From positions 248,001 to 312,000 of IMG/VR virus record IMGVR_UViG_3300027985_000843: 64,000 bases of DNA; one strand, given 5' to 3'. Each line of letters starts with the position of its first letter. Position 1 is the first letter of the stretch. The notes beneath the pieces were generated by a model. That model saw only the letters and a list, made by a program, of their open reading frames with translations. It searched no databases and was not told where the DNA came from. The position numbers were made by a program, and so were the translations under genes. Shown one piece after another: positions 10,196 through 34,030 of the stretch.

Positions 10196-10270
10196 GGAGC
10201 CGGTGATGGGAATCGAACCCACAACTTCGTCCTTACCGAGGACGTGCTCTTCCAAATGAGCTTCACCGGC
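10196..10270 (-). tRNA. tRNA-Thr(GGT)
   Basis: cloverleaf, loop TCGGTAA. Confidence 0.9.
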
Positions 10271-10892
10271 GTAATTTATCCCAACGTTCGGCGGCATCCT
10301 CCCTGACCGTCATCTTCGACCTTCGACCTCGTACTTCGTCGAAAGTGAACACGTAGGCCGTGTCACTTTCGAAATCGTACCCTACGATGAAATCGAAGTC
10401 CGAAGCATCCAAGGGTCTAACACCCCACGCACCATCAGCACAGGTCACCTTGAACTCCGGCAACCCTCTGAGAGGGGCTGCCCACCGAACCTGCAACTTC
10501 TTCAAGCCTTTTGGGGTGCCCACCAACCAATCCACCCTGTCCCCATCGAACTCCGCTCGATAGACGTCAAAATCAAAAACAGCCAGTCTGAATAGCACTG
10601 CTGCCTCGGCGATCTTCATCTTCCGGCGTCTCTCGGAAGGGGACACTGATACAATCTGGGAAAACCCGGAAGGAGTCTCGCGGGCCTTTCTTCGAGTGCC
10701 CCCAGCTTTCAAGCTGCCCCGAACGATCTTTTCTCGTTTGAGATCGGTCGGCAACGGGAGGTCACGGAGCCAGCCACTCAGAGTCGCCTTAGGCACCCCA
10801 AGCAACCGATGGATTTCATTCAATGACAGGTGTTCATCTCGACGAAGCTCAACAGCTTTTGGCTTTAGGTGTAGGTAAGCGGCTTTTGGCAT
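10263..10892 (-). CDS. free-standing HTH + PD-(D/E)xK endonuclease (homing-endonuclease-like)
   Basis: SLNEIHRLLGVPKATLSGW HTH; RVDWLV...KKLQVR nuclease core; stop codon lies in 5' end of tRNA-Thr. Confidence 0.75.
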   Translation of the reverse strand: MPKAAYLHLKPKAVELRRDEHLSLNEIHRLLGVPKATLSGWLRDLPLPTDLKREKIVRGSLKAGGTRRKARETPSGFSQIVSVSPSERRRKMKIAEAAVLFRLAVFDFDVYRAEFDGDRVDWLVGTPKGLKKLQVRWAAPLRGLPEFKVTCADGAWGVRPLDASDFDFIVGYDFESDTAYVFTFDEVRGRRSKMTVREDAAERWDKLRR

Positions 10893-12117: not shown

Positions 12118-12190
12118 TGGGCGCATCAAGAATTGAACTTGAATCTCACGGGTATCAGCCGTGCGTGGAGAACCACCCTACTATACGCCC
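12118..12190 (-). tRNA. tRNA-Ile(GAT), atypical D arm
   Basis: acceptor GGGCGTA/TGCGCCC, loop CTGATAC, T loop TTCAATT. Confidence 0.75.
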
Positions 12191-12217
12191 GAATTGTTTT
12201 GGTGTATCCATTCAGCA

Positions 12218-12751
12218 ATGGGACACCTTGAAGTCATCGCCGGCTCGATGTTCAGCGGCAAGACCGAAGAACTCGTCCGGAGGGTTCGCCGAGCTGTAAT
12301 CGCTCGGCAAAAAGTGCAAGCATTCAAACCTGTCGTTGACAATCGATACGACAAGGAGAGGATCGTCAGCCACTCAGGAGTCGCCATCGACGCGGTGCCC
12401 GTCCCCAATGCAGCAGCCATCGTTGGCCTGGTGGACAAGGACACGAAGGTCATCGCCATGGACGAGGTCCAGTTCTTCGATGCCGGTATCGTTGTCGTGG
12501 CGACCGAGCTAGCCGACAAGGACTACAGGGTCATCATGGCGGGCCTGGACCAAGACTACCTAGGGAATCCCTTTGGCTCGGTGCCCATCCTCATGGCCCT
12601 CGCAGAGAGAGTCACGAAGGTCCAAGCAATATGCTCTTGCTGCGGCCAGGAGGCGTCTAGAACGCAGAGAGTCGTCAATGAGGGTTCCACGGTCCTGGTC
12701 GGGGGCAAAGAGGCATACGAGGCCCGTTGCCGGGCTTGCCACAAGCCCTAG
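12218..12751 (+). CDS. tdk: thymidine kinase
   Basis: GSMFSGKT Walker A, IAMDEVQF, AGLDQDY, CSCC...YEARCRAC zinc site. Confidence 0.95.
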   Translation: MGHLEVIAGSMFSGKTEELVRRVRRAVIARQKVQAFKPVVDNRYDKERIVSHSGVAIDAVPVPNAAAIVGLVDKDTKVIAMDEVQFFDAGIVVVATELADKDYRVIMAGLDQDYLGNPFGSVPILMALAERVTKVQAICSCCGQEASRTQRVVNEGSTVLVGGKEAYEARCRACHKP

Positions 12752-13102: not shown

Positions 13103-14269
<1,167 letters not shown>

Positions 14270-18253: not shown

Positions 18254-18396
18254 CCCGTCACGAAACTCGACCAAAGGTACACGCAGGTTTCCAATCTGCA
18301 TTGTCCTGGTGCCCCAGGACTGAACCAGAAGCAGAGTTAACTCGACACCGAGGTTGTGAGAAAGTGGAGGCGTTCGAGGCGAAGTGCTGGATTTTG

Positions 18397-18469
18397 ATGC
18401 TAGAGACAGGAATCGAACCTGTAACCAACGGCTTGATAGGCCGTAGCTCTACCTATGAGCTACTTTAGC
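18397..18469 (-). tRNA. tRNA with ATC anticodon (nominally Asp, A34) on a non-Asp body
   Basis: GCTAAAG/CTCTAGC, A73, ACGGC-CTATCAA-GCCGT, canonical D and T arms. Confidence 0.8.
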
Positions 18470-18499
18470 GTGTGAGCACGTCTGGGCTGAACGCCTTAG

Positions 18500-18640
18500 A
18501 GGGGAAGTCTGGAGTCGAACCAGATTTGGCTTGTAAGGGCTGCTTGGCTGTCTCCCTTTCGAGAGACGATGCGCAACACTGGAAGAGCTGTTTAGCTCCC
18601 GCTTTCCTGGCGGGTGGGGCACCGTGCCCCTAACTTCCCC
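18500..18640 (-). ncRNA. tRNA-like RNA E (loop CAGGAAA, A33) with variable-arm domain
   Basis: GGGGAAG/CTTCCCC, CCCGC/GCGGG arm, GAAA-capped helix, CTTACAAGC, T loop TTCGACT. Confidence 0.85.
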
Positions 18641-18748
18641 CGTGAGTCTTCGCTTTTCAGAGAACCTGGGGTTGTCACCAACCCGCACTCACTCTCTACA
18701 CCGGTCGAGCGAAGACGCTGTCAAAAATCGACCGGCGAGAGAAAAAAG

Positions 18749-19327
18749 TCAGAGGCGGCTCGCCCCGTTCTTGTGGGCGTAGAAGCCTACCTGTCGACCA
18801 TCCTCGATGAACTGCTGTACCGAGAAGGCCATGTAGCTCGATACGAGGGCAATGAACGGTAGGAACTCGCCACCCTCACAGGTAGCAGCCCCAGCCACGT
18901 CCTCGTCATCGATCTCGAAGTTGGCGTCCCACACGACCTGGCCGAACGTACCGTCGGGCGCGAGGGCACCATGCAGGCAGGGGGTGCCCGCCTTGCGGAC
19001 GAACTTCTGAACGGTTCGGCGAGCCTCCCCATTGTCCAAGCAGTCGAGCACAAGGTCAGCTCCACCAAGAAGCGCCTCGACGTTGTCTGAGACCATCTTG
19101 TGGGGATTCGTCTTGATCTTGAGCCCGAACAGGAACTGGAGACTCTGTGCGAGACCTAGGACCTTGTTCTTGCCCACCGACGGTTTGCCGTGGAACTGGG
19201 ACTTGACGTTCTTCTGCTCCACCCGGTCGAAGTCGATCAGGGTGAAGTCGGCGTCAAAGTTGCGAGCGAACTGCATGAAGTGGGATCCAAGGGCCCCGAC
19301 TCCTACCACAACGATCTTCATCTTCAT
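18749..19327 (-). CDS. ThiF/MoeB-family E1-like adenylating enzyme
   Basis: VGVGALGS, DFDRVEQKN, LDCLDN, candidate catalytic Cys in ATCEG. Confidence 0.9.
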   Translation of the reverse strand: MKMKIVVVGVGALGSHFMQFARNFDADFTLIDFDRVEQKNVKSQFHGKPSVGKNKVLGLAQSLQFLFGLKIKTNPHKMVSDNVEALLGGADLVLDCLDNGEARRTVQKFVRKAGTPCLHGALAPDGTFGQVVWDANFEIDDEDVAGAATCEGGEFLPFIALVSSYMAFSVQQFIEDGRQVGFYAHKNGASRL

Positions 19328-20268
19328 CCTTCCAAGTCCTTGTAAGACCTGCGACTGATAATTCTACCCATAGCAGAATCAGTGATTCCAAACTTTCGGG
19401 CCAGAGAGGCTTTTGTCCAACCTTCAGCAAAAAGACCACGTGCTTCCAATACTTGGTCGTCGGACAGCTTCCTGGATGGCTTCCAATTTGGCTCCCGAAC
19501 AAACCTTAACTTGTATAAACAACAAGCCGGGAGATGGTTCTCTACCAGGGACTTGAGCTTCACGGCCTCAGCTTTTGTGTTCACAGCTATCTTGAACTGT
19601 CCTGGTCGAACAGAGCTTTCCCGAACTACAGTACGTACACCCAGCGAGCCTAGCTTCTCGGAGAGTCGAGAGACACAACCCTCAGAAAAACCATCTGTGC
19701 AGAAAAATAACTGACCTTGTCGATCATAGGTACCGTCGCCTGCAAACCACTGAGCAACAGACAAGGGTGTCAAGACAAGGTCAGAGGGAACTATCTTCAC
19801 ACCCCTGGGGTACCACCTAGCCCGCTGAGTTTTGAACTCACTGTAACAAGGTGTATACAGCAAACGACCGCCCCGCCCATGAATGACACGATCACCCAAG
19901 CACTTGGACCGAGGTGGGACGGGAATGATGGCGGATTCACAACCGTGTTCTACAAGCAGCACAGTCAAAGAGTCCAACCAACCCAACCGAACACGGCCCT
20001 GCTCCAATCGAAGACTCCCCTTAGGGTCCAAGGAGCCATCCCCCAAAAGGACGCCTTCTAAGACCTGCGACACAAGGTCCCAGTCGGCTCGGTGCTCTCG
20101 ATCACCTAGATACCTTGCATTCTGTTCCTTAGAGGAACGTACGAGAACACCCGTCTTCTTCAAACGATTGAGAACATTCCATGTAGAGCAACCAAGTCGG
20201 CGAGCGATAGAGGACGCGCTCTCGCCCGACAGATAGGCTTCGGTCAAAGCTTGGTGATCCATGATCAA
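19324..20268 (-). CDS. free-standing LAGLIDADG homing endonuclease with terminal HTHs
   Basis: LEGVLLGDGSL and AQWFAGDG motifs; inserted between Ubl and E1. Confidence 0.85.
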   Translation of the reverse strand: MIMDHQALTEAYLSGESASSIARRLGCSTWNVLNRLKKTGVLVRSSKEQNARYLGDREHRADWDLVSQVLEGVLLGDGSLDPKGSLRLEQGRVRLGWLDSLTVLLVEHGCESAIIPVPPRSKCLGDRVIHGRGGRLLYTPCYSEFKTQRARWYPRGVKIVPSDLVLTPLSVAQWFAGDGTYDRQGQLFFCTDGFSEGCVSRLSEKLGSLGVRTVVRESSVRPGQFKIAVNTKAEAVKLKSLVENHLPACCLYKLRFVREPNWKPSRKLSDDQVLEARGLFAEGWTKASLARKFGITDSAMGRIISRRSYKDLEG

Positions 20269-20293
20269 AGCCTACCAAACGGTTTATTCGGTG

Positions 20294-20533
20294 TCAACCA
20301 AAAGGTGTTTTGGGCCTGACCATGATCCTGTTGGGCAGGTCCTCGGTCGCCGAGAACCGCTGGACCACGAAGTCCTTGAACTCGACGTCATCCGCAGCCG
20401 TGATGCCCTGGACGTCGCCGCCCGTGACTGCCTCTTGGGCCCACGCAAGGATCTGCGCGTCCGAAGCGTCGAATTCGACCTCGTCCTTCAGGTCACCGTT
20501 CTGACCGTTCCAAGTGATGTTGAGCAGTGCCAT
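20294..20533 (-). CDS. ubiquitin-like (beta-grasp) protein ending in Gly
   Basis: 79 aa, C-terminus RIMVRPKTPFG-stop, next to JAB and E1. Confidence 0.7.
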   Translation of the reverse strand: MALLNITWNGQNGDLKDEVEFDASDAQILAWAQEAVTGGDVQGITAADDVEFKDFVVQRFSATEDLPNRIMVRPKTPFG

Positions 20534-20569
20534 GTTGAGTTCTCCCTTCTCTGGTTCTACATCTCGTCC

Positions 20570-20938
20570 CTAGTACAGGGACAGCTCGTGAAGCTTCGCG
20601 GTCCAAGGAGGCCGCATGATCACGGGCAAGGACTTGTACGAGAGTCGATCACGACCGACCCAGTAAGTGTGGATGAAGACACTGTCTGCCCAGATCCACC
20701 AGTCAAGCCGGCGACCGAGGCCAGACTCAATCGCCGCAAAGGTTGTGATGTCCGTGAAGGATGGGCTCCCGAAGCCACTGGGATGACTATGAGCGAACCC
20801 TGATAGGTTGTCCCGGTTCGCCCAGATGATGTCCCAAAGGTCTTGCGAGTCAGGCAGGGCTCCCCCGGATCGATCGTTCGGGGTATGCCAGAAGAGAGGC
20901 TCTCCCCGAAGGTCAAGAAGTACGCCTGCTTCCCTCAT
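20570..20938 (-). CDS. JAB/MPN (JAMM) metallopeptidase, DUB-like
   Basis: N-terminal Glu, HSHP, PSFTD. Confidence 0.85.
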   Translation of the reverse strand: MREAGVLLDLRGEPLFWHTPNDRSGGALPDSQDLWDIIWANRDNLSGFAHSHPSGFGSPSFTDITTFAAIESGLGRRLDWWIWADSVFIHTYWVGRDRLSYKSLPVIMRPPWTAKLHELSLY

Positions 20939-21138
20939 GACGGTAGTTGTTCCGAGTTCGGCTGCTTGGACTTGATCCAGGCATAGGCAATGTCGCCCAC
21001 CGGAGGCTGGTCACGAGCCCACTGCTTGAGTGAGATCCTGCCGCCTGTCTCGGCCTTCCACTTGCGGATCATCCGACGCCTATCGGAGCGACCCACGCCT
21101 GTGTACTTCTCTTCCATCTTCATCTCCTCAGTGAACAT
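20935..21138 (-). CDS. small basic hypothetical protein
   Basis: 67 aa, overlaps both neighbours in the operon. Confidence 0.55.
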   Translation of the reverse strand: MFTEEMKMEEKYTGVGRSDRRRMIRKWKAETGGRISLKQWARDQPPVGDIAYAWIKSKQPNSEQLPS

Positions 21139-22069
21139 GACGGAACACCACGAGGGCGTTCGTGTCCTGCGCTTCCAGGATGACTGAGGGCAGAGACTCT
21201 AGAGTGAACCAAGTGTCTCCCCTTGTCCCCCTGTTAAAGTCCCTGCTGTCGTATTCAGCAGTCAGGCAGATGCCGGAGTCGATGATCCGAAGGGAGCTAT
21301 CGCAAGTGCATTCGAACCGTCGACCGTTGAGGCGAAAACGAACGATGTGCTCGTTGGCGTTGTACCCGTTGCGGTGGTCGATAAGCTGGGCACCACCAAC
21401 AGCCAAAGCTGCCCGGACACCCTCCTCGAAATCCTCAAACGCCAAGAGTCGTCGACCCTCACTCGTGCCAATCCGTTCGATGGCCCGCTGACGGCGCTCT
21501 TCCGCCTCCCGACGCTTGCGGTCTTCTTCCCGACGCCTCACTTCCTCGGCCCGCCACCAGCATTCAACCTGGAAGGTGGCATCAAGGGCAGGGGTAACCC
21601 CCGGGATGTCGTTCACGCTCTTGGACTCGTCCAGGAACGCCTGTAGAACGGCCTCCTCAGGCCCCGTAGGAAACTCTTGGTTCTCGAAGATGAACGGGCC
21701 ATCCTCGTAGAACTGTCCCACGGACACACGCACGAACTTGTCTAGGCCGGGCTCTACGAGATGAGCCCGACGAAAGTTCTTGACGATGGCCTCGATCTTG
21801 GGCTCAACACGAGCTGCATTCTCGGGAACGAACAAGTCCCCGACGAGGTAGCCCCTCTGGGTGTTCCGAAGAGCACCCATGGGGGCTTCCACCGACTTCT
21901 CCCAAGTGGCCTTGCGGCCTTCGAGGCGGAACTGGTGCCACCCGTGTTCGGGTGGCCGACGCCCCTTGAGCTTCCAGGTGCGATCGAAGGTACGGATGGA
22001 CCCCTCGCCTACCCACGGTGTGACAAGCGAGCTGTCCTCATTGGTCTGCAAGAGGTCCTTCCAACCCAT
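21128..22069 (-). CDS. hypothetical protein, C-terminal domain possibly E2-like
   Basis: 313 aa; charged helix then ...IIDSGICL... resembling the E2 G.ICL active-site segment (function inferred). Confidence 0.7.
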   Translation of the reverse strand: MGWKDLLQTNEDSSLVTPWVGEGSIRTFDRTWKLKGRRPPEHGWHQFRLEGRKATWEKSVEAPMGALRNTQRGYLVGDLFVPENAARVEPKIEAIVKNFRRAHLVEPGLDKFVRVSVGQFYEDGPFIFENQEFPTGPEEAVLQAFLDESKSVNDIPGVTPALDATFQVECWWRAEEVRRREEDRKRREAEERRQRAIERIGTSEGRRLLAFEDFEEGVRAALAVGGAQLIDHRNGYNANEHIVRFRLNGRRFECTCDSSLRIIDSGICLTAEYDSRDFNRGTRGDTWFTLESLPSVILEAQDTNALVVFRHVH

Positions 22070-22077
22070 GTATCACC

Positions 22078-23952
22078 TCACGCCGCAATGGCCCATGCAG
22101 GCTTGCGGAGGATCTCCGTGTTGAGGATCTGTTCCACGAGGCTGACACGCGGGGCGGCCTTGGGAACTCCACCTGTCACCTGGCCCACCGGAGTGGCAGC
22201 GATGAGTGCGCGGACGGTACGCGGGATTGCGTATGGGTCCTTGAACACCTCTTCGTCGACACGGAAGCACGGAATGTTAAGTGCGGCTGCCGCTTCCTGT
22301 ACCACGTGATAGCCGCTGTTGCCCAGGCGAAGCAATCCGAAGGCCGTCGGGTTGATGCCCGATGTCTGAACCGCGTTGACCAGCTGAGTAGGGCCACCGA
22401 AGTCCTCTTCGTCTCCGATGAAGATGAAGATCGCGTCAGTGCCGTCAGCAGGCTTGATCTTGCTCAGGGCCTTGACGCCGGCCGCGTACGAAGTACCGCC
22501 TCCGGCACGGATGCCGAAGAAGGCTTGACGCACACCCGCAGACGATGCCTTCTTGATTGCGATCTCGCGACCGACGGTGTTGAAGATCGCGACGTGGATC
22601 TTGTCGAGCGGAAAGCTGCCGACGAACTTCTCGACATACTGCTTGGCGGCCTCGATGGCAGGGCCCATCGAGCTGGAGACGTCGACGAAGAAGTAAGGCT
22701 CGATACCCTTGACCTCTTCCTCGACAGCCTTCTGAGCTGCCGCGTCAGCCGCGTTTTCGAGCTGTTCCTTCAGTTCCTTCGACTTGACGTTGCGGGCCAG
22801 ATTCGCAGCACGCTGGTCCTCCGCCTGCTTCGTCGCCGTCTCCCACCGCTGCCGGATGTCCTGGACCTTGAGCAGGCCCAACTCTTCGAGCGTTGGAGTG
22901 AGGATGATCAAGTCCTTGTCGGACACGCTCTTGGCCTCGATGGCCGCCGCCATGATGGCACGGGTCAGACCCATGTTCTTCGGGAGGCGCCCCGTGAGGA
23001 GCTTGAAGCTCGGCTTGCCTTGGATGATCTTCTCGCACACTTGCTCTTCGGTCAGGCCCTCCCAAGAGTCTTCCTTGGAGAAGTCCTCGCCGATGCCGAT
23101 GGTCCGACGACCATCGTCAGCTTGCTTCTGCGTCCAGCCCAGGATCTCGTAGAACTTCGAGGTCGACGGCTTGTAGCCCGAGCACTTGGCGAGCTTGATG
23201 ACCGTCTTCTTGAAGCCGGCCTTGGCGAGCCCCTCCAGCAAGGGAAGATTGTCCTCCCGATGCTTGAGCCACTGCCGAACCACCTTCGACCAACGACCGA
23301 GGAACGGCTTGCGAGCGGAACGCCCGAACCCGAGTTCGCGGTTGATCTTCGCAATCCCGTCCAAGCACAGAACGTCGTGGATGCGCATGAGGAGCTTGGC
23401 GTCCAGATGCCGACGGTCCTTGCGGATGTGCAGGCACATGGCCTCACCAACCTCGCGGAAGTCCTCATCGAGGAACGTCTCGTCCTCGTCGCGGATGGGG
23501 TCTCCCTTACGGCTCTGGACCAGCATGAAGGCCGCGAGGATGACCTTCAGGTCCTTGTGCTCCTGAGGGTAGGCGAACGACGCCCAGCGGGCCGCGAATT
23601 CGTTGTCCAAGGCCCACACGTCAGCCACCTGCTGGTACATCCACGTGGCGACCTCCGGGAAGATGCCAGGCTTCTGGTATCGTCCGAGCTTCCGGCGGTC
23701 GTCGCTCCGAACCGTGCCATCCTCCCAGAGCTGACCGACCTTCTGGTTGGCCTTGCCCTTGGTCACGAGGTAGACGACCTTTTTGCCGTCCTCCACCTTG
23801 TGCGTGCAATACTGCCACTTCACACCCACCACCGAACTCGCGTCGGTGGACACGAACCCAGGACGGTTGTGGACCGCGTGGCCGGAGTAGTTGATGAGGG
23901 TGTTGATGACCTTCTCAGCAGGTCCCAGTGTCTCGTTGGCTACCATTTTCAT
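22078..23952 (-). CDS. TROVE-like helical domain + vWA domain (divergent Ro60/Rsr-like)
   Basis: vWA MIDAS FFVDVSSSM, GGGT, FIFIGDEE; upstream helical region with GRWSKVVRQW resembling the Ro60 segment (TROVE call moderate). Confidence 0.75.
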   Translation of the reverse strand: MKMVANETLGPAEKVINTLINYSGHAVHNRPGFVSTDASSVVGVKWQYCTHKVEDGKKVVYLVTKGKANQKVGQLWEDGTVRSDDRRKLGRYQKPGIFPEVATWMYQQVADVWALDNEFAARWASFAYPQEHKDLKVILAAFMLVQSRKGDPIRDEDETFLDEDFREVGEAMCLHIRKDRRHLDAKLLMRIHDVLCLDGIAKINRELGFGRSARKPFLGRWSKVVRQWLKHREDNLPLLEGLAKAGFKKTVIKLAKCSGYKPSTSKFYEILGWTQKQADDGRRTIGIGEDFSKEDSWEGLTEEQVCEKIIQGKPSFKLLTGRLPKNMGLTRAIMAAAIEAKSVSDKDLIILTPTLEELGLLKVQDIRQRWETATKQAEDQRAANLARNVKSKELKEQLENAADAAAQKAVEEEVKGIEPYFFVDVSSSMGPAIEAAKQYVEKFVGSFPLDKIHVAIFNTVGREIAIKKASSAGVRQAFFGIRAGGGTSYAAGVKALSKIKPADGTDAIFIFIGDEEDFGGPTQLVNAVQTSGINPTAFGLLRLGNSGYHVVQEAAAALNIPCFRVDEEVFKDPYAIPRTVRALIAATPVGQVTGGVPKAAPRVSLVEQILNTEILRKPAWAIAA

Positions 23953-24048
23953 CTATCCTTTCAAGCACTTGTGCTGTCCCCACTGTGAGGACGATGTGTG
24001 CCGTCTGGAGAAAACCTTCAAGCATGGATGGATCTCGTAGAAAAAGAA

Positions 24049-24113
24049 TGGTCGGGATGACCGGAATCGAACCGGCATGACCTTCGACCCAAACGAAGTG
24101 GGTTCCCGTTACC

Positions 24114-24123
<10 letters not shown>
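24049..24123 (-). tRNA. tRNA-Pro(TGG)
   Basis: cloverleaf, loop TTTGGGT, CCA. Confidence 0.9.
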
Positions 24124-24335
<212 letters not shown>

Positions 24336-25889: not shown

Positions 25890-26705
25890 TTACTTGGCCG
25901 CGTCTAGCACGGCCTTCAATTCAGGATGGATCTTCTTGCCCATGACGTACATGGCGAAAGCATCTGCGAAGTTCTCTTCAGGGTTGGTGCTTCCGTAGGA
26001 GGACACCGACAACCCTTCCGCCGAGAGGGCCCAGAACTTGTCCTTGAGATCCTTCGAGAGAAACTTGTTGCGGTACCGGTGACCAAGCTCGTGGACGATG
26101 GTGAACACATCGCCCTCTCGCTTCTTCGCATTCACGTCGACATACACCTTGTCGGACGACCAGGCATACTGTGCGGCTGCCACACCACCTATCTTCTTGG
26201 ACAGGTAGATGTCCCCGTAGATGACCTTCGGGAACCTGGCCTTCAACTTGACGGCCGCCGCACCAATGGCCTCAAGAGGCGCCTTCTGCTTGGCTGCGGG
26301 GATACCAGGAAGGGTTATCACCTTGAACCCGTGAACTTCTACGGCTCGATCGGGATCATCCGCCTTGACAGCAGTGTCCAGGGTCTTGAGCCTTTTGCCC
26401 CACGCTTCAAGAAGTCCCGCCACGTAGCTTCGTTGACGGTCTGAGGAAACATCCAACAACTGTCGGAGTTTCCTGCCTTGGCTGTCCAAGTAGACCACGT
26501 TCTTCCGCTGAGAGGGGCCTAAGCCATGGAACCATGCGGGTGGCTTCCCACCGGGTGGTAGCGTGATGCCCAGAACCTTCTCGACGAACTCTTGCATCGC
26601 GGGGATGTCGCCGGCCCTGTACCTGTCCAGGACATCTTGGAACTCCACGGTCAGACTTCCCGCAGCAGTCAAGTACCTGTGGACCACTCTGTCAACGACG
26701 CTCAT
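25890..26705 (-). CDS. zincin-like metallopeptidase with DRVVHRYL leader
   Basis: VHELGH and YG.TNPEENFADAF motifs. Confidence 0.75.
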   Translation of the reverse strand: MSVVDRVVHRYLTAAGSLTVEFQDVLDRYRAGDIPAMQEFVEKVLGITLPPGGKPPAWFHGLGPSQRKNVVYLDSQGRKLRQLLDVSSDRQRSYVAGLLEAWGKRLKTLDTAVKADDPDRAVEVHGFKVITLPGIPAAKQKAPLEAIGAAAVKLKARFPKVIYGDIYLSKKIGGVAAAQYAWSSDKVYVDVNAKKREGDVFTIVHELGHRYRNKFLSKDLKDKFWALSAEGLSVSSYGSTNPEENFADAFAMYVMGKKIHPELKAVLDAAK

Positions 26706-26779
26706 ACAACAACCACAGGATAAAAGGGTTCCGACGTCCGATGGGAAGAGCTGGTTGCGTATTAACGAGATAGGCTCAG

Positions 26780-26861
26780 AGCCGGGTGTGGGACTCGAAC
26801 CCACGATGTGTTTCCACGGCTGGTTAACAGCCAGCTGCCTTGGCCACTAGGCTAACCCGGC
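26780..26861 (-). tRNA. tRNA-Asn(GTT) with long variable arm
   Basis: loop CTGTTAA; variable region CGTGGAAACACATC; U73. Confidence 0.85.
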
Positions 26862-27084: not shown

Positions 27085-27588
27085 CTAGTCCTGTCGGGTT
27101 GTCAAAGGTCGCGTGGTAGATCCCTCTACCAGGAAAAACTTCTTCAAGGGTCGCCGACGATACTTCTTCTTGATGTTCCGTCCAGCGAAGGTTGTGGTCT
27201 GAGAGTGACAGTTCGGGCAAAGAAGTCGCAGGTTCTCAATCCTATTGTCTCGACGATCTCCGTTCATGTGGTCGATCTGAAGCACCAGCGACTTACCAAG
27301 CCACTCTGTCAAACCGCACTGACTGCACTGGTCTTCGACTTTGCCTGTCTTCAAGAGGCGTTTCTTGAGCCAAACACCACTGACCACCGGCCCGACTACA
27401 AAAACCTCCTCATCCTTATATAGCCGCAGTTTTCGACACTTCAGGTCGCCTCTCTCTACTGCGGCATCCCATTGACCTCTCGTGAGTGAGAAAGCAGTTG
27501 CTGTGGCTCGACTGGAGTAACCCTCATCGTAATGCCTTTGGACAGCTTCCCAGTCCACATCCCTTGACTTGATCTCCACGTTCGCCAT
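27085..27588 (-). CDS. free-standing HNH homing endonuclease
   Basis: CSQC...LQIDHMNGDRRDNRIENLRLLCPNCH. Confidence 0.9.
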   Translation of the reverse strand: MANVEIKSRDVDWEAVQRHYDEGYSSRATATAFSLTRGQWDAAVERGDLKCRKLRLYKDEEVFVVGPVVSGVWLKKRLLKTGKVEDQCSQCGLTEWLGKSLVLQIDHMNGDRRDNRIENLRLLCPNCHSQTTTFAGRNIKKKYRRRPLKKFFLVEGSTTRPLTTRQD

Positions 27589-27627
27589 TTCCTGTTGAGT
27601 TCTGATAAACAGATCAGGAAACGGTAG

Positions 27628-27700
27628 ATGGGACGGTGGGATTCGAACCCACAACCGCCTGGATCAGAGCCAGGTGCACAGCCAATTGTGCTACGTCCCA
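27628..27700 (-). tRNA. tRNA-Gln(CTG)
   Basis: T1-A72, loop CTCTGAT. Confidence 0.95.
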
Positions 27701-30715: not shown

Positions 30716-31322
30716 CTATGTCGAACATCTCCTCGGGGCTGAGGGTATGCTGGCCGAGGGTGCCGGTCTCGGGAGTTTCCTCGGGAGGCTCCTGAGTCTT
30801 CACCGGTTCGGCTTCCTTTGTCAGGTCGAACTCGACGGATGCCTCGACCCCCTTGTCGTACCCCATGAGCACTGCACGCCGGCCTGGTTCAGCCAAGCCA
30901 AGACACGGCATGTGTGCCGCCGTAGTCTTCGCGTCCCACAGCTCGATGGTGTCCTTCGTGTGGATCTGGAGGACGGTGGCGAGCATATGGAGCTGGAGAA
31001 GCATATACCTACCGCTCGGGAACCTGAGCAGCCCCACGCTTCCCTTGGTGGTCCACTCCTGGAGCTTGGCGACAGACACCAGATACGGGTCCACCTTGTG
31101 ACACTGGATGTAGTTGAGGATCATGTTGAGAGTGTCGCCAGCCCCCTTCCACCGGCCGTAAACAGCCTTGCCCTCTACAGCCACGAGCCATACCCGATTT
31201 GTCGCCACGTTCCAGACGTTACCAGCCACGTCGACAACGGAGAACGGCTTGCCGTATGCCTGCAAGCCCCCAGGGTCCCCCTCGGTCGTGAATACGAACG
31301 GCGACAGATCTAGTTTGCCCAT
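30699..31322 (-). CDS. hypothetical protein
   Basis: 207 aa, start overlaps MTase stop. Confidence 0.6.
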   Translation of the reverse strand: MGKLDLSPFVFTTEGDPGGLQAYGKPFSVVDVAGNVWNVATNRVWLVAVEGKAVYGRWKGAGDTLNMILNYIQCHKVDPYLVSVAKLQEWTTKGSVGLLRFPSGRYMLLQLHMLATVLQIHTKDTIELWDAKTTAAHMPCLGLAEPGRRAVLMGYDKGVEASVEFDLTKEAEPVKTQEPPEETPETGTLGQHTLSPEEMFDIVMDGL

Positions 31323-34030
31323 CAATCCAGCTCCATCATGAAGTCGAAGAGGCTCATCTGTTCTTGCCGGACCTTCTCCCGACCCAGAACGATGTCCATC
31401 CGTTTGGTGGCAATGTCGCAAGCATGCGGGTCCTTGTCGATGCCGATGTAGTTTACACCTTCCAGACAGGCAGCATGCAGAGTCGATCCCGAACCACAGT
31501 AGGGGTCGAGAACGGTGCCGCCCTTGACACACACGAGACGAACGAGCCATCTCATGAGTTCGAGGGGCTTCTTGGTTGGATGGTCGTTCTCGATCAACCC
31601 TTCCAAGGTGAACTCCTTGGGCGATGGCTTGGCGACGTACCGAAAAGGAGCATCAGGCTCTTGGAACTGGCCGTAGAAGCGGGAGGCCCCTCCGGAGTCC
31701 TTGGTGCAGGTCGAGGGAATTGTACCATCAGCATCATCAGAGGATGCTCCGTGGTACCCCATACCTTTATTCTGAGCCCCTGAATACCCTGCCCTGAGTT
31801 CTCCACTCTGCTCATCCAGTTCCTTGACCGGGCACCCATCGACGCACTCCCACACGGGGATCTCTTCCTGCCCGTTTTCGTCCCCCGTCTGCGTCGACGT
31901 GTACTCGTGACCGGCCCCGCCGCCGAACGGCTTGGCCCCATCGTCGAACCGGTTGATGACGGGAGCGTCGACCTTCCTATGGCCGACGACCTTGCAGTCC
32001 GGATGGTGCGTCAGGGCCGCGTTGGGGGGCCACCGACCCTCGGGTGTGTCATCGCCCTCGAACTGAGGGTAGAACCTGGAGGCCCCGCCCTCGTCTGCGT
32101 AGACACGACTCAGATGCTCACGGTCCTCACCGAGAAACGTCGATTTGGAAGACTTGTCCGTCCCAGGGTGATCATGCACCTGGTTCGGATCGGCCCGGCC
32201 CGTGAGCGTTGAAGGACGATCCCCGCTCTGCTCATCGAGGGCAGCTACGGGGCAGCCGGGAACACACTCCCAGGCTTCGACCGTTTCGGTACCGTCTTCG
32301 TCAGCATGGCCCACCAAGGATCTGGTTTGAAACTTCCCGTACGCGTACTTGGTAGTGTCTGACTCAATCTTGTTGCCAGGATTGTTGGAAAGAACCTTCT
32401 TCGTCCCCACCTTCCGGCAATCCGGGTGATGAGCAAGCACGCCGTTCGTAGGCCATCGGCCTGCCTCGGTCACTTCACTGGCCCCGCTCAGGTCAGAGGC
32501 GTTCTTCCACGAATTGCCTCGTACCCCGCCCTTGGCCCGAACCGCCTCGACCTGGGCCTTGTGCGCTTCGAAGTCTTCCTTGCTCGCATGCTTGATGCGG
32601 CACGCATCAATGTTCAGGGCGCCGGTACCGTACTTCAGCACATTGTCTGTGACAGTGCCCTCGCAAGGCTTCCGGAAGACGAGAATTGGTTCCCAGCAGG
32701 GCTTGAGCCCCGTACCCTTGCCATCGTGAAGCTTGGCTTCTGCCGTGGCTGGCTCCGTGACCTCTCGTGTGTCCTCGGCTGCCCTGGGGAGGTCGCCGGG
32801 GGACATCGCCCGCGAGTGCTTGTTGGCCCGAGCAGCGTACGGGCTCTTACCAAGCACCTTCCGCTTCGCCCCGGCCTTCTTGTCGATTTGTTTCGAAATG
32901 TTCGTGCTCTTGGGCATGCCCGAGTTACCCGTCACAAAAATCAAATCTCCTCGACGGGCAACGAAAGCTCCCGTGGGGACAGTCACGCACCAAACAGGGC
33001 CTTGGTAGGGAACTCGTCCGAACCTCGCCAAATGGGGAGAGGCGAACCGTGATGCTCCTCTGTCCACGCAACACGGCCCTTGTGTCCGTGCTTCGCCCAC
33101 TCTCTGCCGCGAACCACCCCGTTGCACTTGCTCGAACAGAATACCTGACGAATTCCCTTCCGAACCCAACATCTCTGACGATAAAACGGACGGCCGCACT
33201 GAGAACAAGTCAGAAGAACTTTCCCCTTGTGTTCCGAGGCAGGCTTCTTCGTAGTTTTCCGAGCCCTGGATACAAGTTCGTAGTGACATTGAGGCGAGCA
33301 AGTCTCCCGACGTGCTTCCTTGGCATCGAGCACTTTGAAGGGTGTCGAGCAAACCTTGCAAGTCTTCGATAAGGGGTACTTCCGCTTGGGCATGGACTTC
33401 CTGGGCTGAGACGATCTTCCACTCCCCACCATGAAGCATCACCACACGGTGATCTGGTGTCACGTCGTAGCATCCTTGGTCCGGCAGTTCAACCCTGACC
33501 ATAGGCCCACTGTGATGGTGAGCATGAACTTCTCGGACAGGCTGCCAGTCAAAGCTACCGTCTTTCGGGTCGAAGCCCAACAGACGAATTCCCGAACGCA
33601 CTTCTTCAGAAAACACCCAACCAGAGGGTGTCAGCACCTGTACATCCGGAGTCAGGCACCCGTAGTTCCAGGCGAGGCCCGGGTACAAGTCCTCGATGGA
33701 ATCTCGATTTTCGAAACCGGCCGCTCGAAGGCCCATGCTGATGATGTCCCACGTTCGAGTGCCACCGAAAGACAGTACGTGGCCTCCGGGCTTGAGGACG
33801 CGGTAGCCTTCCTTCCACACGAGAACGGAAGGGATCTCCCAGTTGGCGCCCATGAAGTCACCACCGGTGTCAAGGTCAGCTCCCTGCAAATACGCAATGA
33901 GCTGTTCCAACGTGATCTTCTTGTTCCCGAGGCCATAAGGCACGTCGGTCACAATGGCATCAACGGAGTTGTCGGGGAGGGTTCTGAGGACTTCGAGAGA
34001 GGTCCCGCAAAGGATAGTGTTGAGTTCCAC
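31322..34030 (-). CDS. N6A/N4C DNA methyltransferase (beta type) with intein and duplicated Cys/His module
   Basis: VTDVPY motif IV, VLDPYCGSGST motif I, HPTKKP. Confidence 0.9.
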   Translation of the reverse strand: MELNTILCGTSLEVLRTLPDNSVDAIVTDVPYGLGNKKITLEQLIAYLQGADLDTGGDFMGANWEIPSVLVWKEGYRVLKPGGHVLSFGGTRTWDIISMGLRAAGFENRDSIEDLYPGLAWNYGCLTPDVQVLTPSGWVFSEEVRSGIRLLGFDPKDGSFDWQPVREVHAHHHSGPMVRVELPDQGCYDVTPDHRVVMLHGGEWKIVSAQEVHAQAEVPLIEDLQGLLDTLQSARCQGSTSGDLLASMSLRTCIQGSENYEEACLGTQGESSSDLFSVRPSVLSSEMLGSEGNSSGILFEQVQRGGSRQRVGEARTQGPCCVDRGASRFASPHLARFGRVPYQGPVWCVTVPTGAFVARRGDLIFVTGNSGMPKSTNISKQIDKKAGAKRKVLGKSPYAARANKHSRAMSPGDLPRAAEDTREVTEPATAEAKLHDGKGTGLKPCWEPILVFRKPCEGTVTDNVLKYGTGALNIDACRIKHASKEDFEAHKAQVEAVRAKGGVRGNSWKNASDLSGASEVTEAGRWPTNGVLAHHPDCRKVGTKKVLSNNPGNKIESDTTKYAYGKFQTRSLVGHADEDGTETVEAWECVPGCPVAALDEQSGDRPSTLTGRADPNQVHDHPGTDKSSKSTFLGEDREHLSRVYADEGGASRFYPQFEGDDTPEGRWPPNAALTHHPDCKVVGHRKVDAPVINRFDDGAKPFGGGAGHEYTSTQTGDENGQEEIPVWECVDGCPVKELDEQSGELRAGYSGAQNKGMGYHGASSDDADGTIPSTCTKDSGGASRFYGQFQEPDAPFRYVAKPSPKEFTLEGLIENDHPTKKPLELMRWLVRLVCVKGGTVLDPYCGSGSTLHAACLEGVNYIGIDKDPHACDIATKRMDIVLGREKVRQEQMSLFDFMMELD
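32924..33658 (-). mobile_element. intein (245 aa) in the methyltransferase
   Basis: starts CLTPDVQVLT, block B VTPDHRV, ends VWCVTVPTGAFVARRGDLIFVTGN then +1 Ser. Confidence 0.85.
32983..33393 (-). CDS. alternate-frame Zn-finger ORF nested in the intein
   Basis: MPKRKY..CKVC...CSPQC...CSQC...FCSSKC. Confidence 0.55.
   Translation of the reverse strand: MPKRKYPLSKTCKVCSTPFKVLDAKEARRETCSPQCHYELVSRARKTTKKPASEHKGKVLLTCSQCGRPFYRQRCWVRKGIRQVFCSSKCNGVVRGREWAKHGHKGRVAWTEEHHGSPLPIWRGSDEFPTKALFGA

What the first reader, a model, noticed from the sequence alone, without database searches (positions are those of the whole stretch)
18749..23952. Apparently complete ubiquitin-like conjugation operon on a phage-like element
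SEEN: E1 (GVGALG, DFDRVE..N, DCLDN, ATCEG), a 79-aa Ubl ending PFG-stop, JAB with HSHP/PSFTD, and a 313-aa protein whose C-terminal IIDSGICL recalls the E2 G.ICL active-site segment, all translationally coupled behind a vWA protein. ESTABLISHED: bacterial E1/E2/Ubl/JAB operons (Bil, Bub, CBASS Cap2/Cap3) conjugate Ubls to proteins, some in antiphage defence. No sulfur-transfer genes (ThiS/MoaD pathway partners) are nearby. INFERENCE: the element may use protein conjugation itself, against host proteins or competing phages, or to decoy host Ubl defence.
Basis: partly seen in the sequence, partly recalled or inferred. Interest (0 to 1): 0.82.

Follow-up and report, generated by a model that had tools for sequence, protein, structure and literature searches.

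The report
Ubiquitin-like activation cassette without recognisable E2
A huge phage carries a tightly packed gene cassette, shared with about 90 other huge-phage and myxobacterial loci, that encodes a small ubiquitin-like protein, its activating enzyme and its trimming protease, but pairs them with two uncharacterised partner proteins instead of a recognisable ubiquitin-conjugating (E2) enzyme.

Summary
On the minus strand at 18749-23952 lie a vWA/MIDAS protein, a 313-aa orphan protein, a 67-aa ORF, a JAMM peptidase, a 79-aa Ubl ending ...RPKTPFG-stop, and a 192-aa minimal E1.

The order vWA-313-(JAB)-Ubl-E1 recurs in 55 huge-phage loci and 37 MAG loci. One of these sits on an 11.5-Mb bacterial contig with ordinary cellular neighbours. 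The cassette is therefore self-contained and not phage-specific.

Ubl orthologues keep the RPKTPFG motif and then carry 0-61 variable residues. All 13 JAB-less cassettes end exactly at Gly. This argues that JAB trims the Ubl so that the E1 can activate the exposed Gly.

The E2 claim is not supported. AlphaFold models of the 313-aa protein and of its C-terminal domain give no Foldseek match to any UBC fold, and no E2 profile matches. Its Cys268 (GxCL) is nevertheless conserved in 137 of 138 representatives, so a non-UBC thioester carrier remains plausible.

The vWA-linked cassette was not mentioned in the papers I searched and opened. I rate it a new variant of prokaryotic Ubl systems. Whether its output is protein conjugation or sulfur transfer, and what it targets, are untested.

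The parts
22078..23952 (-). 624-aa protein: roughly 400-aa N-terminal domain of unknown family plus C-terminal vWA domain with a complete MIDAS site. First gene of the cassette.
   Evidence: Pfam VWA_2 1.8e-6 and VWA 3.8e-4. A profile of 46 orthologues hits PDB vWA domains (BatA-like 4jdu, 1.8e-4). D424, S426, S428, T487 and D514 are invariant. No TROVE hit in any of the 46 orthologues. ESM Atlas feature similarity to TROVE/Ro60 clusters of 0.87-0.92 is only a lead.
21128..22069 (-). 313-aa orphan protein: N-terminal beta-rich domain (about residues 1-145), long helix (160-201), and C-terminal alpha/beta domain (about 205-313) carrying the nearly invariant Cys268.
   Evidence: No Pfam, PHROG, PADLOC or NCBIfam match. 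AF2 model pLDDT 85.4. The family has 459 representative clusters, all standalone and about 300-330 aa. No structural match in PDB or BFVD.
21266..21268 (-). Codon of Cys268 (GICL), the candidate catalytic or thioester cysteine.
   Evidence: Cys in 137 of 138 full-length representatives, Gly266 in 137 of 138. The other residues conserved at 95% or more cluster in the same domain: R206, R207, L269, D285, L290, E291. Cys256 is not conserved (68/138), which argues against a zinc site.
20935..21138 (-). 67-aa ORF overlapping the stop of the 313-aa gene and the start of JAB. Accessory, not part of the core.
   Evidence: Homologues in only 5 related loci (L002, L013, L017, L021, L024). No family match.
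20570..20938 (-). 122-aa JAMM/MPN+ metallopeptidase, the predicted C-terminal maturase (and possibly deconjugase) of the Ubl.
   Evidence: E3, H50, H52, S60 and D63 are invariant or nearly so in 43 orthologues. Prok-JAB 18.6 bits is below the 25-bit cut-off. Its presence tracks Ubl C-terminal tails.
20294..20533 (-). 79-aa ubiquitin-like protein ending ...RPKTPFG directly before the stop codon (Gly79 codon at 20297-20299).
   Evidence: The RPKTPFG motif is conserved in about 80 orthologues and followed by 0-61 variable residues. Predicted-structure neighbours outside its own family are Ub-RnfH/ThiS and PRTRC protein C (Prok_Ub) at TM about 0.5. No Pfam Ubl family matches.
19324..20268 (-). 314-aa LAGLIDADG homing endonuclease with flanking HTH domains, a mobile insertion between Ubl and E1.
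   Evidence: LAGLIDADG_2 1.6e-15. GC3 is 0.51 against 0.68-0.81 in the cassette genes. Absent from most relatives. A homologous endonuclease sits between Ubl and E1 in L059, L030 and L033, just upstream of E1 in L018 and downstream of E1 in L044.
18749..19327 (-). 192-aa minimal E1-like adenylating enzyme (adenylation domain only). Cys150 codon at 18878-18880.
   Evidence: ThiF 3.1e-22. Best PDB match is MoeB, 2.4e-9, followed by UBA5 and Uba4. It matches the E1 part of PADLOC Cap2 profiles at 1.6e-13. G9/G11/G14, D32, K55, D95, D98, R103 and T149-C150 are invariant. The canonical Arg of NxxRQ is Ser43 in 38 of 44 orthologues.
18740..18767 (-). Terminator-like hairpin plus T-run at the E1 stop codon. 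Likely end of the transcription unit.
   Evidence: It is the only terminator-like site in 18300-24300, reported as two overlapping matches against 5.3 expected in shuffles, and both lie here.
24049..24123 (-). tRNA-Pro(TGG), the last gene of the co-oriented tRNA array, 96 nt upstream of the vWA start codon.
   Evidence: ARAGORN and Rfam tRNA, 55.8 bits. In 38 of 45 related phage loci the cassette has at least one tRNA gene in its flanks, and many sit inside co-oriented arrays.

Best explanation
This is a self-contained ubiquitin-like activation and transfer cassette.

Proposed steps:
1. Where the Ubl is made with extra residues after ...RPKTPFG, the JAMM peptidase cuts them off and exposes Gly. 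In this window the Ubl already ends at Gly.
2. The minimal E1, probably a homodimer as in MoeB, adenylates that Gly and probably takes it onto its invariant Cys150.
3. The Ubl then passes to the nearly invariant Cys268 of the 313-aa protein. I read this protein as a non-UBC functional analogue of an E2/E3.
4. The Ubl finally goes onto a target chosen with the help of the vWA protein, whose intact MIDAS site is a metal-dependent protein-binding surface.

Shown here by comparative sequence evidence: the identities of E1, JAMM and vWA; the conservation of the gene order; the requirement for a free C-terminal Gly; and the link between JAB and Ubl tails.

Inferred only: the thioester relay through Cys268, protein conjugation as the output, and the nature of the target.

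The cassette is shared by large bacterial (mostly Myxococcota-labelled) contigs and huge phages. That suggests a role in host-virus or virus-virus conflict, but the role is unknown.
For: - The E1, JAMM and vWA assignments rest on motifs and profiles.
- The order vWA-313-(JAB)-Ubl-E1, on one strand, recurs in 55 IMG/VR loci and 37 MAG loci. These include an 11.5-Mb and a 1.03-Mb contig with unrelated cellular neighbours. These four or five genes are therefore the functional unit.
- The Ubl motif RPKTPFG is conserved and followed by 0-61 variable residues.
- All 13 JAB-less cassettes end at Gly, against 15 of 70 JAB-containing ones (Fisher p=7e-8). JAB was lost at least 4 times independently on supported branches, each time with a tail-less Ubl.
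- E1 Cys150 is invariant in 44 orthologues.
- Cys268 of the 313-aa protein is conserved in 137 of 138 representatives, and the other top-conserved residues lie in the same domain.
- That domain has the element order helices, four-strand meander, Cys, helix. From my own knowledge, this is the order of elements in UBC folds.
- No sulfur-acceptor enzyme, rhodanese or desulfurase is present in the cassette or in its variable neighbourhoods.
- The C-terminus is Phe-Gly, not the Gly-Gly of known sulfur carriers (my own knowledge). Atg8-type modifiers end FG plus a cleaved tail (my own knowledge).
Against: - No E2 fold or E2 profile is detectable in the 313-aa protein. Its role as a thioester carrier therefore rests only on one nearly invariant Cys and on strict co-occurrence.
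- The loop after Cys268 is poorly modelled (pLDDT below 50).
- The E1 family lacks the canonical Arg of NxxRQ, so adenylation competence is assumed rather than shown.
- The beta-grasp fold of the Ubl is supported only by predicted-structure neighbours at TM about 0.5. No Pfam Ubl family matches.
- A JAMM-trimmed tail also occurs in at least one sulfur-carrier system, QbsE/QbsD (my own knowledge). The tail/JAB link therefore does not discriminate conjugation from sulfur transfer.
- There are no expression or biochemical data. Only DNA runs hold the sequence.
Confidence: 0.45

Rival explanations
1. E2-independent system. The E1 alone activates the Ubl and conjugation proceeds without any E2, as in archaeal SAMP/UbaA or Urm1/Uba4. 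The vWA and 313-aa proteins are then not enzymes of the cascade. They would be its substrates, or a sensor/effector pair switched by Ubl attachment, much as the CD-NTase is primed in type II CBASS.
For: No E2 fold or profile was found. E2-free conjugation has precedent (PMC9574740 for Urm1; SAMP systems in PMC4443979). The 313-aa and vWA proteins are strictly co-conserved with Ubl and E1 but have no enzymatic signature apart from one Cys and a MIDAS site.
Against: A residue conserved in 137 of 138 representatives, together with neighbouring conserved Arg, Asp and Glu, looks more like an active site than a modification site. Acceptor residues for Ubls are usually Lys. No Lys or His in the 313-aa protein is conserved in more than 80% of the 138 representatives.
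Confidence: 0.22
2. Sulfur-carrier system. The E1 adenylates the Ubl, which is converted to a C-terminal thiocarboxylate. Cys268 could act as a persulfide relay. The sulfur would go to a metabolite or to tRNA thiolation, which would fit the tRNA-rich setting in phages.
For: The best sequence matches of the E1 are ThiF and MoeB. JAMM trimming of a tail occurs in the QbsE/QbsD system (my own knowledge). In 38 of 45 phage loci the cassette has tRNA genes in its flanks, often arrays.
Against: The C-terminus is Phe-Gly, not Gly-Gly. No rhodanese domain, cysteine desulfurase, TtuA/Ncs6-type PP-loop enzyme, ThiG or MoaE was found in the cassette or in any neighbourhood examined. The chromosomal copies examined (L098, L100-L102) have no tRNA genes in their flanks. 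A vWA/MIDAS partner has no precedent in sulfur transfer, to my knowledge.
Confidence: 0.15
3. RNA-quality-control coupling. The vWA protein is a divergent Ro60-like (TROVE + vWA) RNA-binding ring, and the Ubl machinery regulates a ribonucleoprotein that handles the phage's many tRNAs.
For: In the ESM Atlas feature search, 68 of the 100 nearest clusters carry TROVE families, with scores of 0.87-0.92. The architecture (about 400 aa plus a C-terminal vWA) and the size resemble Ro60. The cassette is embedded in tRNA arrays in most phage loci. Weak Foldseek similarities of the 313-aa protein are to RNase II/Dis3L2 and dsRBD folds.
Against: No TROVE hit in any of 46 orthologues at E<=1. The profile search of PDB found only vWA domains and no Ro60. 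The Atlas structure search did not return TROVE clusters. Rfam found no Y-RNA-like or other non-tRNA RNA in the window. The chromosomal copies examined lack tRNA genes in their flanks. All the RNA-fold hits have E>0.1.
Confidence: 0.08
4. Counter-defence. The phage copy mainly serves to subvert host Ubl-based immunity of the Bil or CBASS type, with the JAMM acting as a deconjugase and the Ubl as a decoy.
For: Ubl-based antiphage systems exist (10.1101/2023.09.26.559546; PMC10097602). All 54 IMG/VR loci retain JAB, whereas the JAB-less cassettes were found only among loci deposited as MAGs.
Against: JAB presence tracks the tail of its own Ubl, which points to a dedicated maturase. The whole cassette, not JAB alone, is conserved in phages and in large bacterial contigs alike.
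Confidence: 0.05

Closest known systems
Bil (bacterial ISG15-like) systems, BilABCD, the type 6d operons of Iyer et al. 2006 (PMC1779556; 10.1101/2023.09.26.559546)
   Same: A small operon with a Ubl, an E1-like enzyme and a JAMM/JAB peptidase. The Ubl C-terminal Gly is the reactive end.
   Different: Bil has a recognisable E2 (BilB) and no vWA protein. Here no E2 fold or profile is found, and two other conserved partners are present (the vWA/MIDAS protein and the 313-aa Cys protein). PADLOC models matched only the E1 part.
Type II CBASS Cap2/Cap3 (PMC10097602)
   Same: The E1 domain matches Cap2 E1-E2 profiles at 1.6e-13. A JAMM peptidase is the partner.
   Different: Cap2 is an E1-E2 fusion that conjugates the CD-NTase itself, and there is no separate Ubl. 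Here the E1 is a 192-aa stand-alone domain, a separate Ubl exists, and there is no CD-NTase.
Bub pathways (PMC11601596)
   Same: A diverged bacterial Ubl pathway in which the Ubl is released by a dedicated peptidase before activation.
   Different: According to that paper, Bub E1 and E2 work through oxyester intermediates, the E1 lacks a catalytic Cys, and the deconjugase is a Ser-His protease. Here both E1 Cys150 and Cys268 are conserved, and the peptidase is a JAMM.
E2-less Ubl systems: archaeal SAMP/UbaA/HvJAMM1 (PMC4443979), Urm1/Uba4 (PMC9574740), Thermus TtuB/TtuC
   Same: A minimal set of Ubl + E1 + JAMM without a UBC-fold E2.
   Different: Those Ubls end in Gly-Gly and double as sulfur carriers (my own knowledge), and their E1s often carry rhodanese or zinc motifs. 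This Ubl ends in Phe-Gly, and the E1 has neither. Two extra conserved proteins are obligatory partners.
FtsH ternary vWA-MoxR conflict systems with a Ubl-conjugation apparatus (Kaur et al. 2020, PMC7159879)
   Same: A vWA protein genetically linked to E1, JAB and a Ubl in bacteria with complex lifestyles.
   Different: Those systems also have MoxR and FtsH AAA+ ATPases, a Ubl-E2 fusion, a RING-type E3 and caspase-like effectors. None of these is in this cassette.
PRTRC cassette (ThiF-related, with the Prok_Ub protein C)
   Same: The E1 hits the PRTRC ThiF model at 1.1e-9. The Ubl model is nearest to PRTRC protein C (Prok_Ub) among named families, at TM about 0.5.
   Different: No ParB-related or other PRTRC proteins are present. 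Scores are far below the family cut-offs.

Membership tests
E1-like adenylating enzymes (ThiF/MoeB/UBA superfamily) | Rossmann-type ATP-binding GxGxxG and a profile match above the curated threshold | tested here: met
   ThiF 79.3 bits against a cut-off of 28.1. G9, G11 and G14 are invariant in 44 sequences.
E1-like adenylating enzymes (ThiF/MoeB/UBA superfamily) | Mg/ATP-binding Asp of DxxDN and the conserved Lys | tested here: met
   D95, D98 and K55 are invariant and N99 is in 43 of 44. They align to the MoeB equivalents.
E1-like adenylating enzymes (ThiF/MoeB/UBA superfamily) | Arg of the N-x-x-R-Q motif | tested here: not met
   The position is Ser43 in 38 of 44 and Ala in 5. R22, R35 and K39 are conserved and might substitute, but this is untested.
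E1-like adenylating enzymes (ThiF/MoeB/UBA superfamily) | Cys after the adenylation core (the MoeB/ThiF/Atg7-type position) | tested here: met
   T149-C150 are invariant in 44 of 44. Thioester formation itself cannot be tested here.
JAMM/MPN+ metallopeptidases | E...HxHx7SxxD zinc-binding and catalytic motif | tested here: met
   H50, H52, S60 and D63 are invariant and E3 is conserved at 90% or more in 43 orthologues.
JAMM/MPN+ metallopeptidases | Profile match above the Pfam gathering score | tested here: inconclusive
   Prok-JAB 18.6 bits against a cut-off of 25. Orthologues were pre-annotated as Prok-JAB (weak).
Ubiquitin-like beta-grasp modifiers | Beta-grasp fold | tested here: inconclusive
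   The ESM Atlas model (pTM 0.70) has Ub-RnfH/ThiS and Prok_Ub clusters as its nearest named neighbours at TM about 0.5. No Pfam Ubl family matches in 40 orthologues, and there is no PDB sequence hit.
Ubiquitin-like beta-grasp modifiers | Conserved C-terminal Gly that is exposed or exposable, encoded next to an E1 | tested here: met
   The RPKTPFG motif is followed by 0-61 residues in about 80 orthologues. The gene lies upstream of the E1 in all loci where both were found, directly adjacent unless other genes are inserted between them.
E2 / UBC-fold conjugating enzymes | UBC fold | tested here: not met
   Foldseek against PDB gave no hit with E<0.1 and no E2 among the top 50, for the full model and for the C-terminal domain model. 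BFVD and the ESM Atlas gave nothing. Only the order of secondary-structure elements resembles UBC.
E2 / UBC-fold conjugating enzymes | Sequence-profile match (UQ_con, Prok-E2_A-E, PADLOC E2) and the HPN motif | tested here: not met
   No E2 family at E<=1 for the protein, at E<=10 for 51 C-terminal domains, or in PADLOC. The sequence upstream of Cys268 is LRIIDSG, with no HPN.
E2 / UBC-fold conjugating enzymes | Invariant catalytic Cys | tested here: met
   Cys268 is present in 137 of 138 representatives. Catalysis itself is not testable with these tools.
ThiS/MoaD-type sulfur-carrier systems | Gly-Gly C-terminus | tested here: not met
   The terminus is Phe/Tyr-Gly in all listed orthologues but one, which ends Phe-Ala (L056); none ends Gly-Gly.
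ThiS/MoaD-type sulfur-carrier systems | Co-encoded sulfur donor or acceptor (rhodanese, desulfurase, ThiG, MoaE, TtuA, CysM) | tested here: not met
   None in the cassette, in the window ORFs scanned, or in six fully annotated neighbourhoods.
Ro60 / TROVE + vWA RNA-binding proteins | TROVE domain N-terminal to the vWA domain | tested here: not met
   No TROVE hit in 46 orthologues at E<=1. The PDB profile search found no Ro60. Only language-model feature similarity of 0.87-0.92. The fold of the N-terminal domain was not modelled.
vWA domain proteins | MIDAS motif DxSxS...T...D | tested here: met
   D424, S426, S428, T487 and D514 are invariant in 46 orthologues.
Bil / CBASS type II / Bub defence systems | Full gene set of the system (BilB E2; Cap2 fusion plus CD-NTase; Bub oxyester E1/E2 plus Ser-His protease) | tested here: not met
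   PADLOC matched only the E1 portion and weakly the JAB. There was no hit for the Ubl, the 313-aa protein or the vWA protein.

The most novel reading that the evidence does not exclude
The 313-aa protein founds a new, non-UBC class of Ubl-transfer enzyme. It would take the Ubl from a minimal E1 onto its Cys268 and, docked to a MIDAS-containing vWA adaptor, ligate it to specific targets. This would be an independently evolved E2/E3 solution. Huge phages would deploy it to tag host or rival-virus proteins, and Myxococcota would carry it chromosomally.
Probability: 0.3. Interest if true: 0.85.

Novelty: new variant of a known kind. Interest (0 to 1): 0.68.

Why it matters
Bacterial ubiquitin-like pathways (Bil, CBASS Cap2/Cap3, Bub) have recently changed views on the origin of ubiquitination and on antiviral immunity.

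This cassette would add a further, widespread type. The orphan family has 459 representative clusters. It lacks a recognisable E2, always carries a vWA/MIDAS protein and an orphan Cys protein, and is encoded by viruses themselves as well as on large bacterial contigs.

If the Cys protein is a thioester carrier, it would show that the E2 step can be solved by a different fold. If it is not, the system is a compact model for E2-free conjugation.

Either way, it makes directly testable the question of what a phage does with its own ubiquitin-like system. The module is small (four or five genes), and the Ubl leaves a distinctive TPFG tryptic remnant.

Tried and rejected
1. E2 fold for the 313-aa protein. 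I made two AlphaFold models, full length (pLDDT 85) and C-terminal domain (pLDDT 74). Foldseek against PDB and BFVD gave no hit with E<0.01 and no UBC fold. The best weak hits were RNase II, dsRBD, NrdR and a Dsb dimerisation domain. Pfam, PADLOC, NCBIfam and PHROGs gave nothing, as did the PDB profile search and the ESM Atlas.

2. CxC...C...H zinc site in that domain. Rejected: Cys256 is present in only 68 of 138 representatives and His311 is not invariant.

3. Ro60/TROVE identity of the vWA protein. This was suggested by ESM Atlas features. It was not confirmed by Pfam on 46 orthologues or by the PDB profile search. Rfam found no Y-RNA-like RNA. I kept it only as a low-probability rival.

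4. Strict functional tie to tRNAs. Rejected as a requirement: the chromosomal copies examined (L098, L100-L102) have no tRNA genes in their flanks.

5. Phage tail-assembly Ubl/JAB of the lambda TAPI/TAPK type (weak phrog_5556 hit). Rejected because an E1 is present and the cassette also occurs outside phages.

6. Annotated or cultured phage relatives. The only GenBank phage record with a match is the metagenomic Virus Rctr197k, where the region is annotated as hypothetical.

7. Literature searches for a vWA-linked Ubl/E1/JAB cassette in phages or Myxococcota found no description. Burroughs & Aravind 2016 (PMC5062991) was not available.

8. Sequencing-run search. Only DNA runs from a hydrothermal-vent metagenome hold the region and no RNA evidence was found.

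Full report
**What is there.** The window matches, at 100% identity over the 313-aa protein, IMG/VR contig UViG_3300027985_000843 (371.7 kb). Public runs labelled hydrothermal vent metagenome hold the region. Its first 28 kb carry 45 tRNA genes, all on the minus strand.

Between tRNA-Pro (24049-24123) and tRNA-Asp(ATC) (18398-18469) lie seven minus-strand genes:
- a 624-aa vWA protein (22078-23952);
- a 313-aa protein (21128-22069);
- a 67-aa ORF (20935-21138);
- a 122-aa JAMM peptidase (20570-20938);
- a 79-aa protein ending RPKTPFG-stop (20294-20533);
- a 314-aa LAGLIDADG homing endonuclease (19324-20268);
- a 192-aa E1-like enzyme (18749-19327).

The gaps between them are +8, -11, -4, +36, +25 and -4 nt. 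The only terminator-like site in the region sits at the E1 stop codon.

**Identities that hold.**
- E1: Pfam ThiF at 3.1e-22. It aligns to MoeB, UBA5 and Uba4 in PDB and to the E1 half of CBASS Cap2 profiles. In 44 orthologues the GxGxxG glycines, D32, K55, D95, D98, R103 and T149-C150 are invariant. One canonical residue is missing: the Arg of NxxRQ is Ser43 in 38 of 44.
- JAMM peptidase: it falls below the Pfam threshold, but it has the complete E...HxHx7SxxD motif, conserved in 43 orthologues.
- vWA protein: the domain is confirmed by Pfam and by a PDB profile search, and it has an invariant MIDAS site.
- Endonuclease: a clear LAGLIDADG_2 member with GC3 of 0.51 against 0.68-0.81 in the cassette genes. 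It is absent from most relatives. It lies between Ubl and E1 in L059, L030 and L033, and next to E1 in L018 and L044. It is a mobile insertion rather than part of the system.

**Conservation and distribution.** The 313-aa protein has more than 800 homologue clusters at 90% identity, with no Pfam domain. Many are on contigs of 200-660 kb. A search of 1.84 billion representatives found 459 clusters with E<=0.001. Almost all of the 150 listed are about 300-330 aa, apart from fragments, and none carries a long extra region.

Around 55 IMG/VR relatives and 37 relatives in species-representative genomes (all MAGs, mostly labelled Myxococcota), the same order recurs on one strand: vWA, 313-aa, JAB, Ubl, E1. 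Variable small ORFs or endonucleases are sometimes inserted.

In phages the cassette usually sits inside co-oriented tRNA arrays. At least one tRNA lies within about 7 kb in 38 of 45 loci, and often there are 10-30.

It also lies on very large contigs among ordinary cellular genes that differ from case to case:
- an 11.5-Mb contig, between an acyl-CoA dehydrogenase gene and a Kelch-repeat gene;
- a 1.03-Mb contig, between a CHAT-TPR gene and a STAND kinase gene;
- 253-kb and 119-kb contigs.

The functional unit is therefore these four or five genes. It is shared between large bacterial contigs and huge phages. The only GenBank phage record with a match is the metagenomic Virus Rctr197k, where the region is annotated as hypothetical.

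**The Ubl and its maturation.** All orthologues keep a (L/I/V)RPKTPFG motif and then continue for 0 to 61 unconserved residues. This is the classic signature of a modifier whose C-terminal Gly must be exposed.

A natural experiment supports this. In 13 cassettes the JAB gene is missing and the 313-aa gene abuts the Ubl gene. In all 13 the Ubl stops exactly at Gly. Among 70 cassettes with JAB, 55 carry a tail (Fisher p=7e-8). On an E1 tree, JAB loss is forced at least four separate times by well-supported branches, each time next to a tail-bearing, JAB-containing sister. The sign test on four pairs cannot reach significance.

I conclude that the JAMM enzyme is the C-terminal maturase of this Ubl and that the free Gly carboxylate is what the E1 acts on.

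The fold of the Ubl is less secure. No Pfam or PDB sequence match exists. The ESM Atlas model has Ub-RnfH/ThiS and PRTRC protein C (Prok_Ub) as its nearest named neighbours, at only TM about 0.5.

**Is the 313-aa protein an E2?** By every membership test I could run, it is not.
- An AlphaFold model with pLDDT 85 shows an N-terminal beta-rich domain, a 40-residue helix, and a C-terminal alpha/beta domain.
- Foldseek of that model, and of a separately modelled C-terminal domain, against 350,000 PDB chains returned nothing below E=0.1 and no UBC fold in the top 50. BFVD and the ESM Atlas were equally silent.
- No E2 profile from Pfam or PADLOC matches the protein or any of 51 orthologous domains. 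There is no HPN motif.

- Cys268 in GxCL is present in 137 of 138 diverse representatives.
- The other residues conserved at 95% or more (R206, R207, G266, L269, D285, L290, E291) lie mostly in the same domain.
- The neighbouring CxC is not conserved, which argues against a zinc site.
- The order of elements (helices, four-strand meander, Cys, helix) is UBC-like in outline only.

The fair statement is that this is an orphan fold with a probable catalytic cysteine. It works where an E2 would be expected, but it is not a member of the E2 family.

**Mechanism.** The best-supported reading is a Ubl activation and transfer cassette.
1. JAMM trimming exposes Gly where a tail is present.
2. The minimal E1 adenylates the Gly.
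3. The Ubl forms a thioester on E1 Cys150.
4. It passes to Cys268 of the 313-aa protein.
5. The vWA/MIDAS protein acts as docking or target-selecting subunit.

Step 1 and the substrate of step 2 are supported by comparative evidence. Steps 3 to 5 are inference.

Three things argue for conjugation rather than sulfur transfer:
- the Phe-Gly terminus, which from my own knowledge is like Atg8-type modifiers (FG plus a cleaved tail) and unlike the Gly-Gly of ThiS, MoaD, Urm1 and SAMPs;
- the absence of any sulfur donor or acceptor gene in the cassette or in six annotated neighbourhoods;
- the obligatory vWA partner.

Several points argue for caution. A JAMM-trimmed tail also occurs in the QbsE/QbsD sulfur-carrier system (my own knowledge). 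The E1 lacks one canonical Arg. There are no expression or biochemical data.

**Rivals.**
- An E2-free system in which the vWA and 313-aa proteins are targets or a regulated effector pair (0.22).
- A sulfur carrier (0.15).
- A Ro60-like ribonucleoprotein link (0.08). This was suggested by language-model features and the tRNA context, but it was not confirmed by Pfam on 46 orthologues, by the PDB profile search or by Rfam.
- A counter-defence decoy (0.05).

**Comparison with known systems.** The cassette belongs to the broad kind first predicted by Iyer, Burroughs and Aravind (PMC1779556), which is now exemplified by Bil, CBASS Cap2/Cap3 and Bub (10.1101/2023.09.26.559546; PMC10097602; PMC11601596).
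- It differs from Bil by lacking an E2 and having vWA plus the Cys protein.
- It differs from CBASS by having a separate Ubl and no E1-E2 fusion or CD-NTase.
- It differs from Bub by keeping cysteines and a JAMM. Bub uses oxyesters and a Ser-His protease.
- It differs from SAMP/Urm1-type E2-less systems by the FG terminus and by its two obligatory partners.
- vWA-linked Ubl machinery has been described in FtsH ternary systems (PMC7159879). Those also contain MoxR, FtsH, a Ubl-E2 fusion and a RING E3, none of which is here.

The full-text searches and the papers I opened did not describe this cassette.

**Verdict.** This is a new variant of a known kind. It is of real interest to people working on bacterial ubiquitin-like pathways and on huge-phage biology. 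The key open points (thioester on Cys268, conjugation versus thiocarboxylate, targets) can be tested directly with a four- or five-gene reconstitution.

Noticed in passing
window 19324-20268 (-): An intact LAGLIDADG homing-endonuclease gene with HTH domains at both ends lies between Ubl and E1, with an ATGA overlap onto the E1 start. Its GC3 is 0.51 against 0.68-0.81 in its neighbours. A homologous endonuclease lies between Ubl and E1 in L059, L030 and L033, and next to E1 in L018 and L044. This suggests a homing site in the conserved Ubl-3'/E1-5' DNA.
   Followed up: partly
window 18398-18469 (-); also L038 4488-4562, L041 9743-9815, L039 12701-12775, L045 14360-14433: A tRNA-Asp with the unusual anticodon ATC (A34) lies about 280 nt downstream of the E1 gene. 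The same odd tRNA follows E1 within about 500 nt in L038 and L041, and it also occurs in the L039 and L045 loci. Related loci carry other A34 tRNAs: Val-AAC right after E1 in L007 and L055, Ile-AAT in L048, Asn-ATT in L052, and Leu-AAG in L008, L028 and L056. Unexplained.
   Followed up: no
window 371-28034 (-): 45 tRNA genes, all on the minus strand, cover most amino acids. One has an undetermined anticodon (953-1042). Rfam confirms 38 at gathering score and finds no other RNA family in the window.
   Followed up: partly
window 13103-14269 (-): A full-length EF-Tu homologue (388 aa) is encoded within the tRNA region. An EF-Tu gene lies at a similar distance from the cassette in L002 (441-kb contig).
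   Followed up: no
L020 14517-14877, L053 12744-13101, L056 12504-12872: tmRNA genes with tag peptides lie within a few kb of the cassette in three related huge-phage loci.
   Followed up: no
L042, L046, L049, L054, L032, L040, L053 (Ubl genes): Some Ubl orthologues carry long tails after ...FG. Several have CxxC pairs that look like a small zinc ribbon (L042, L046, L049, L054). Others are highly charged and of low complexity (L040, L053). These may be cleaved pro-domains with a function of their own.
   Followed up: no
L017, L019, L022, L031, L038, L044, L047, L048, L050, L055, L056 (313-aa orthologues): About a fifth of the 313-aa orthologues end in a poly-Asp/Glu tail, often finishing with Trp or Tyr. 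Such a tail could be a ligand for the MIDAS site of the adjacent vWA protein. This is speculation.
   Followed up: no
window 25890-26804 (-): A 304-aa protein with an HELGH zincin motif and a weak Pfam match to the anthrax lethal factor N/C-terminal domain family (ATLF, E=8e-5, below threshold). It is probably a metallopeptidase-like protein embedded among the tRNAs.
   Followed up: no
window 27085-27654 (-), 10263-10892 (-), 12161-12751 (+), 8164-8637 (+), 31322-34030 (-), 34948-35859 (-): Other annotated genes in the window: an HNH endonuclease, a PD-(D/E)XK endonuclease-like protein, thymidine kinase, a stand-alone response-regulator receiver domain, a 902-aa N6/N4 DNA methylase, and a protein containing sigma-70 region 2.
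   Followed up: no
L004 5423-5731, L005 2803-3111; L098 15337-16416: A thioredoxin gene lies directly upstream of the vWA gene in one phage lineage. A DsbA/thioredoxin-like gene lies about 3.5 kb downstream of E1, beyond a large kinase gene, in one chromosomal copy. This could matter if Cys254/Cys268 are redox-active.
   Followed up: no
L089 (CBDDAB010000014.1, 1.28-Mb Verrucomicrobiales contig): A diverged, JAB-less cassette (34% identity) lies on a 1.28-Mb contig together with 13 tRNA genes, a transposase and an HNH gene. It may be an integrated element derived from such a phage.
   Followed up: partly
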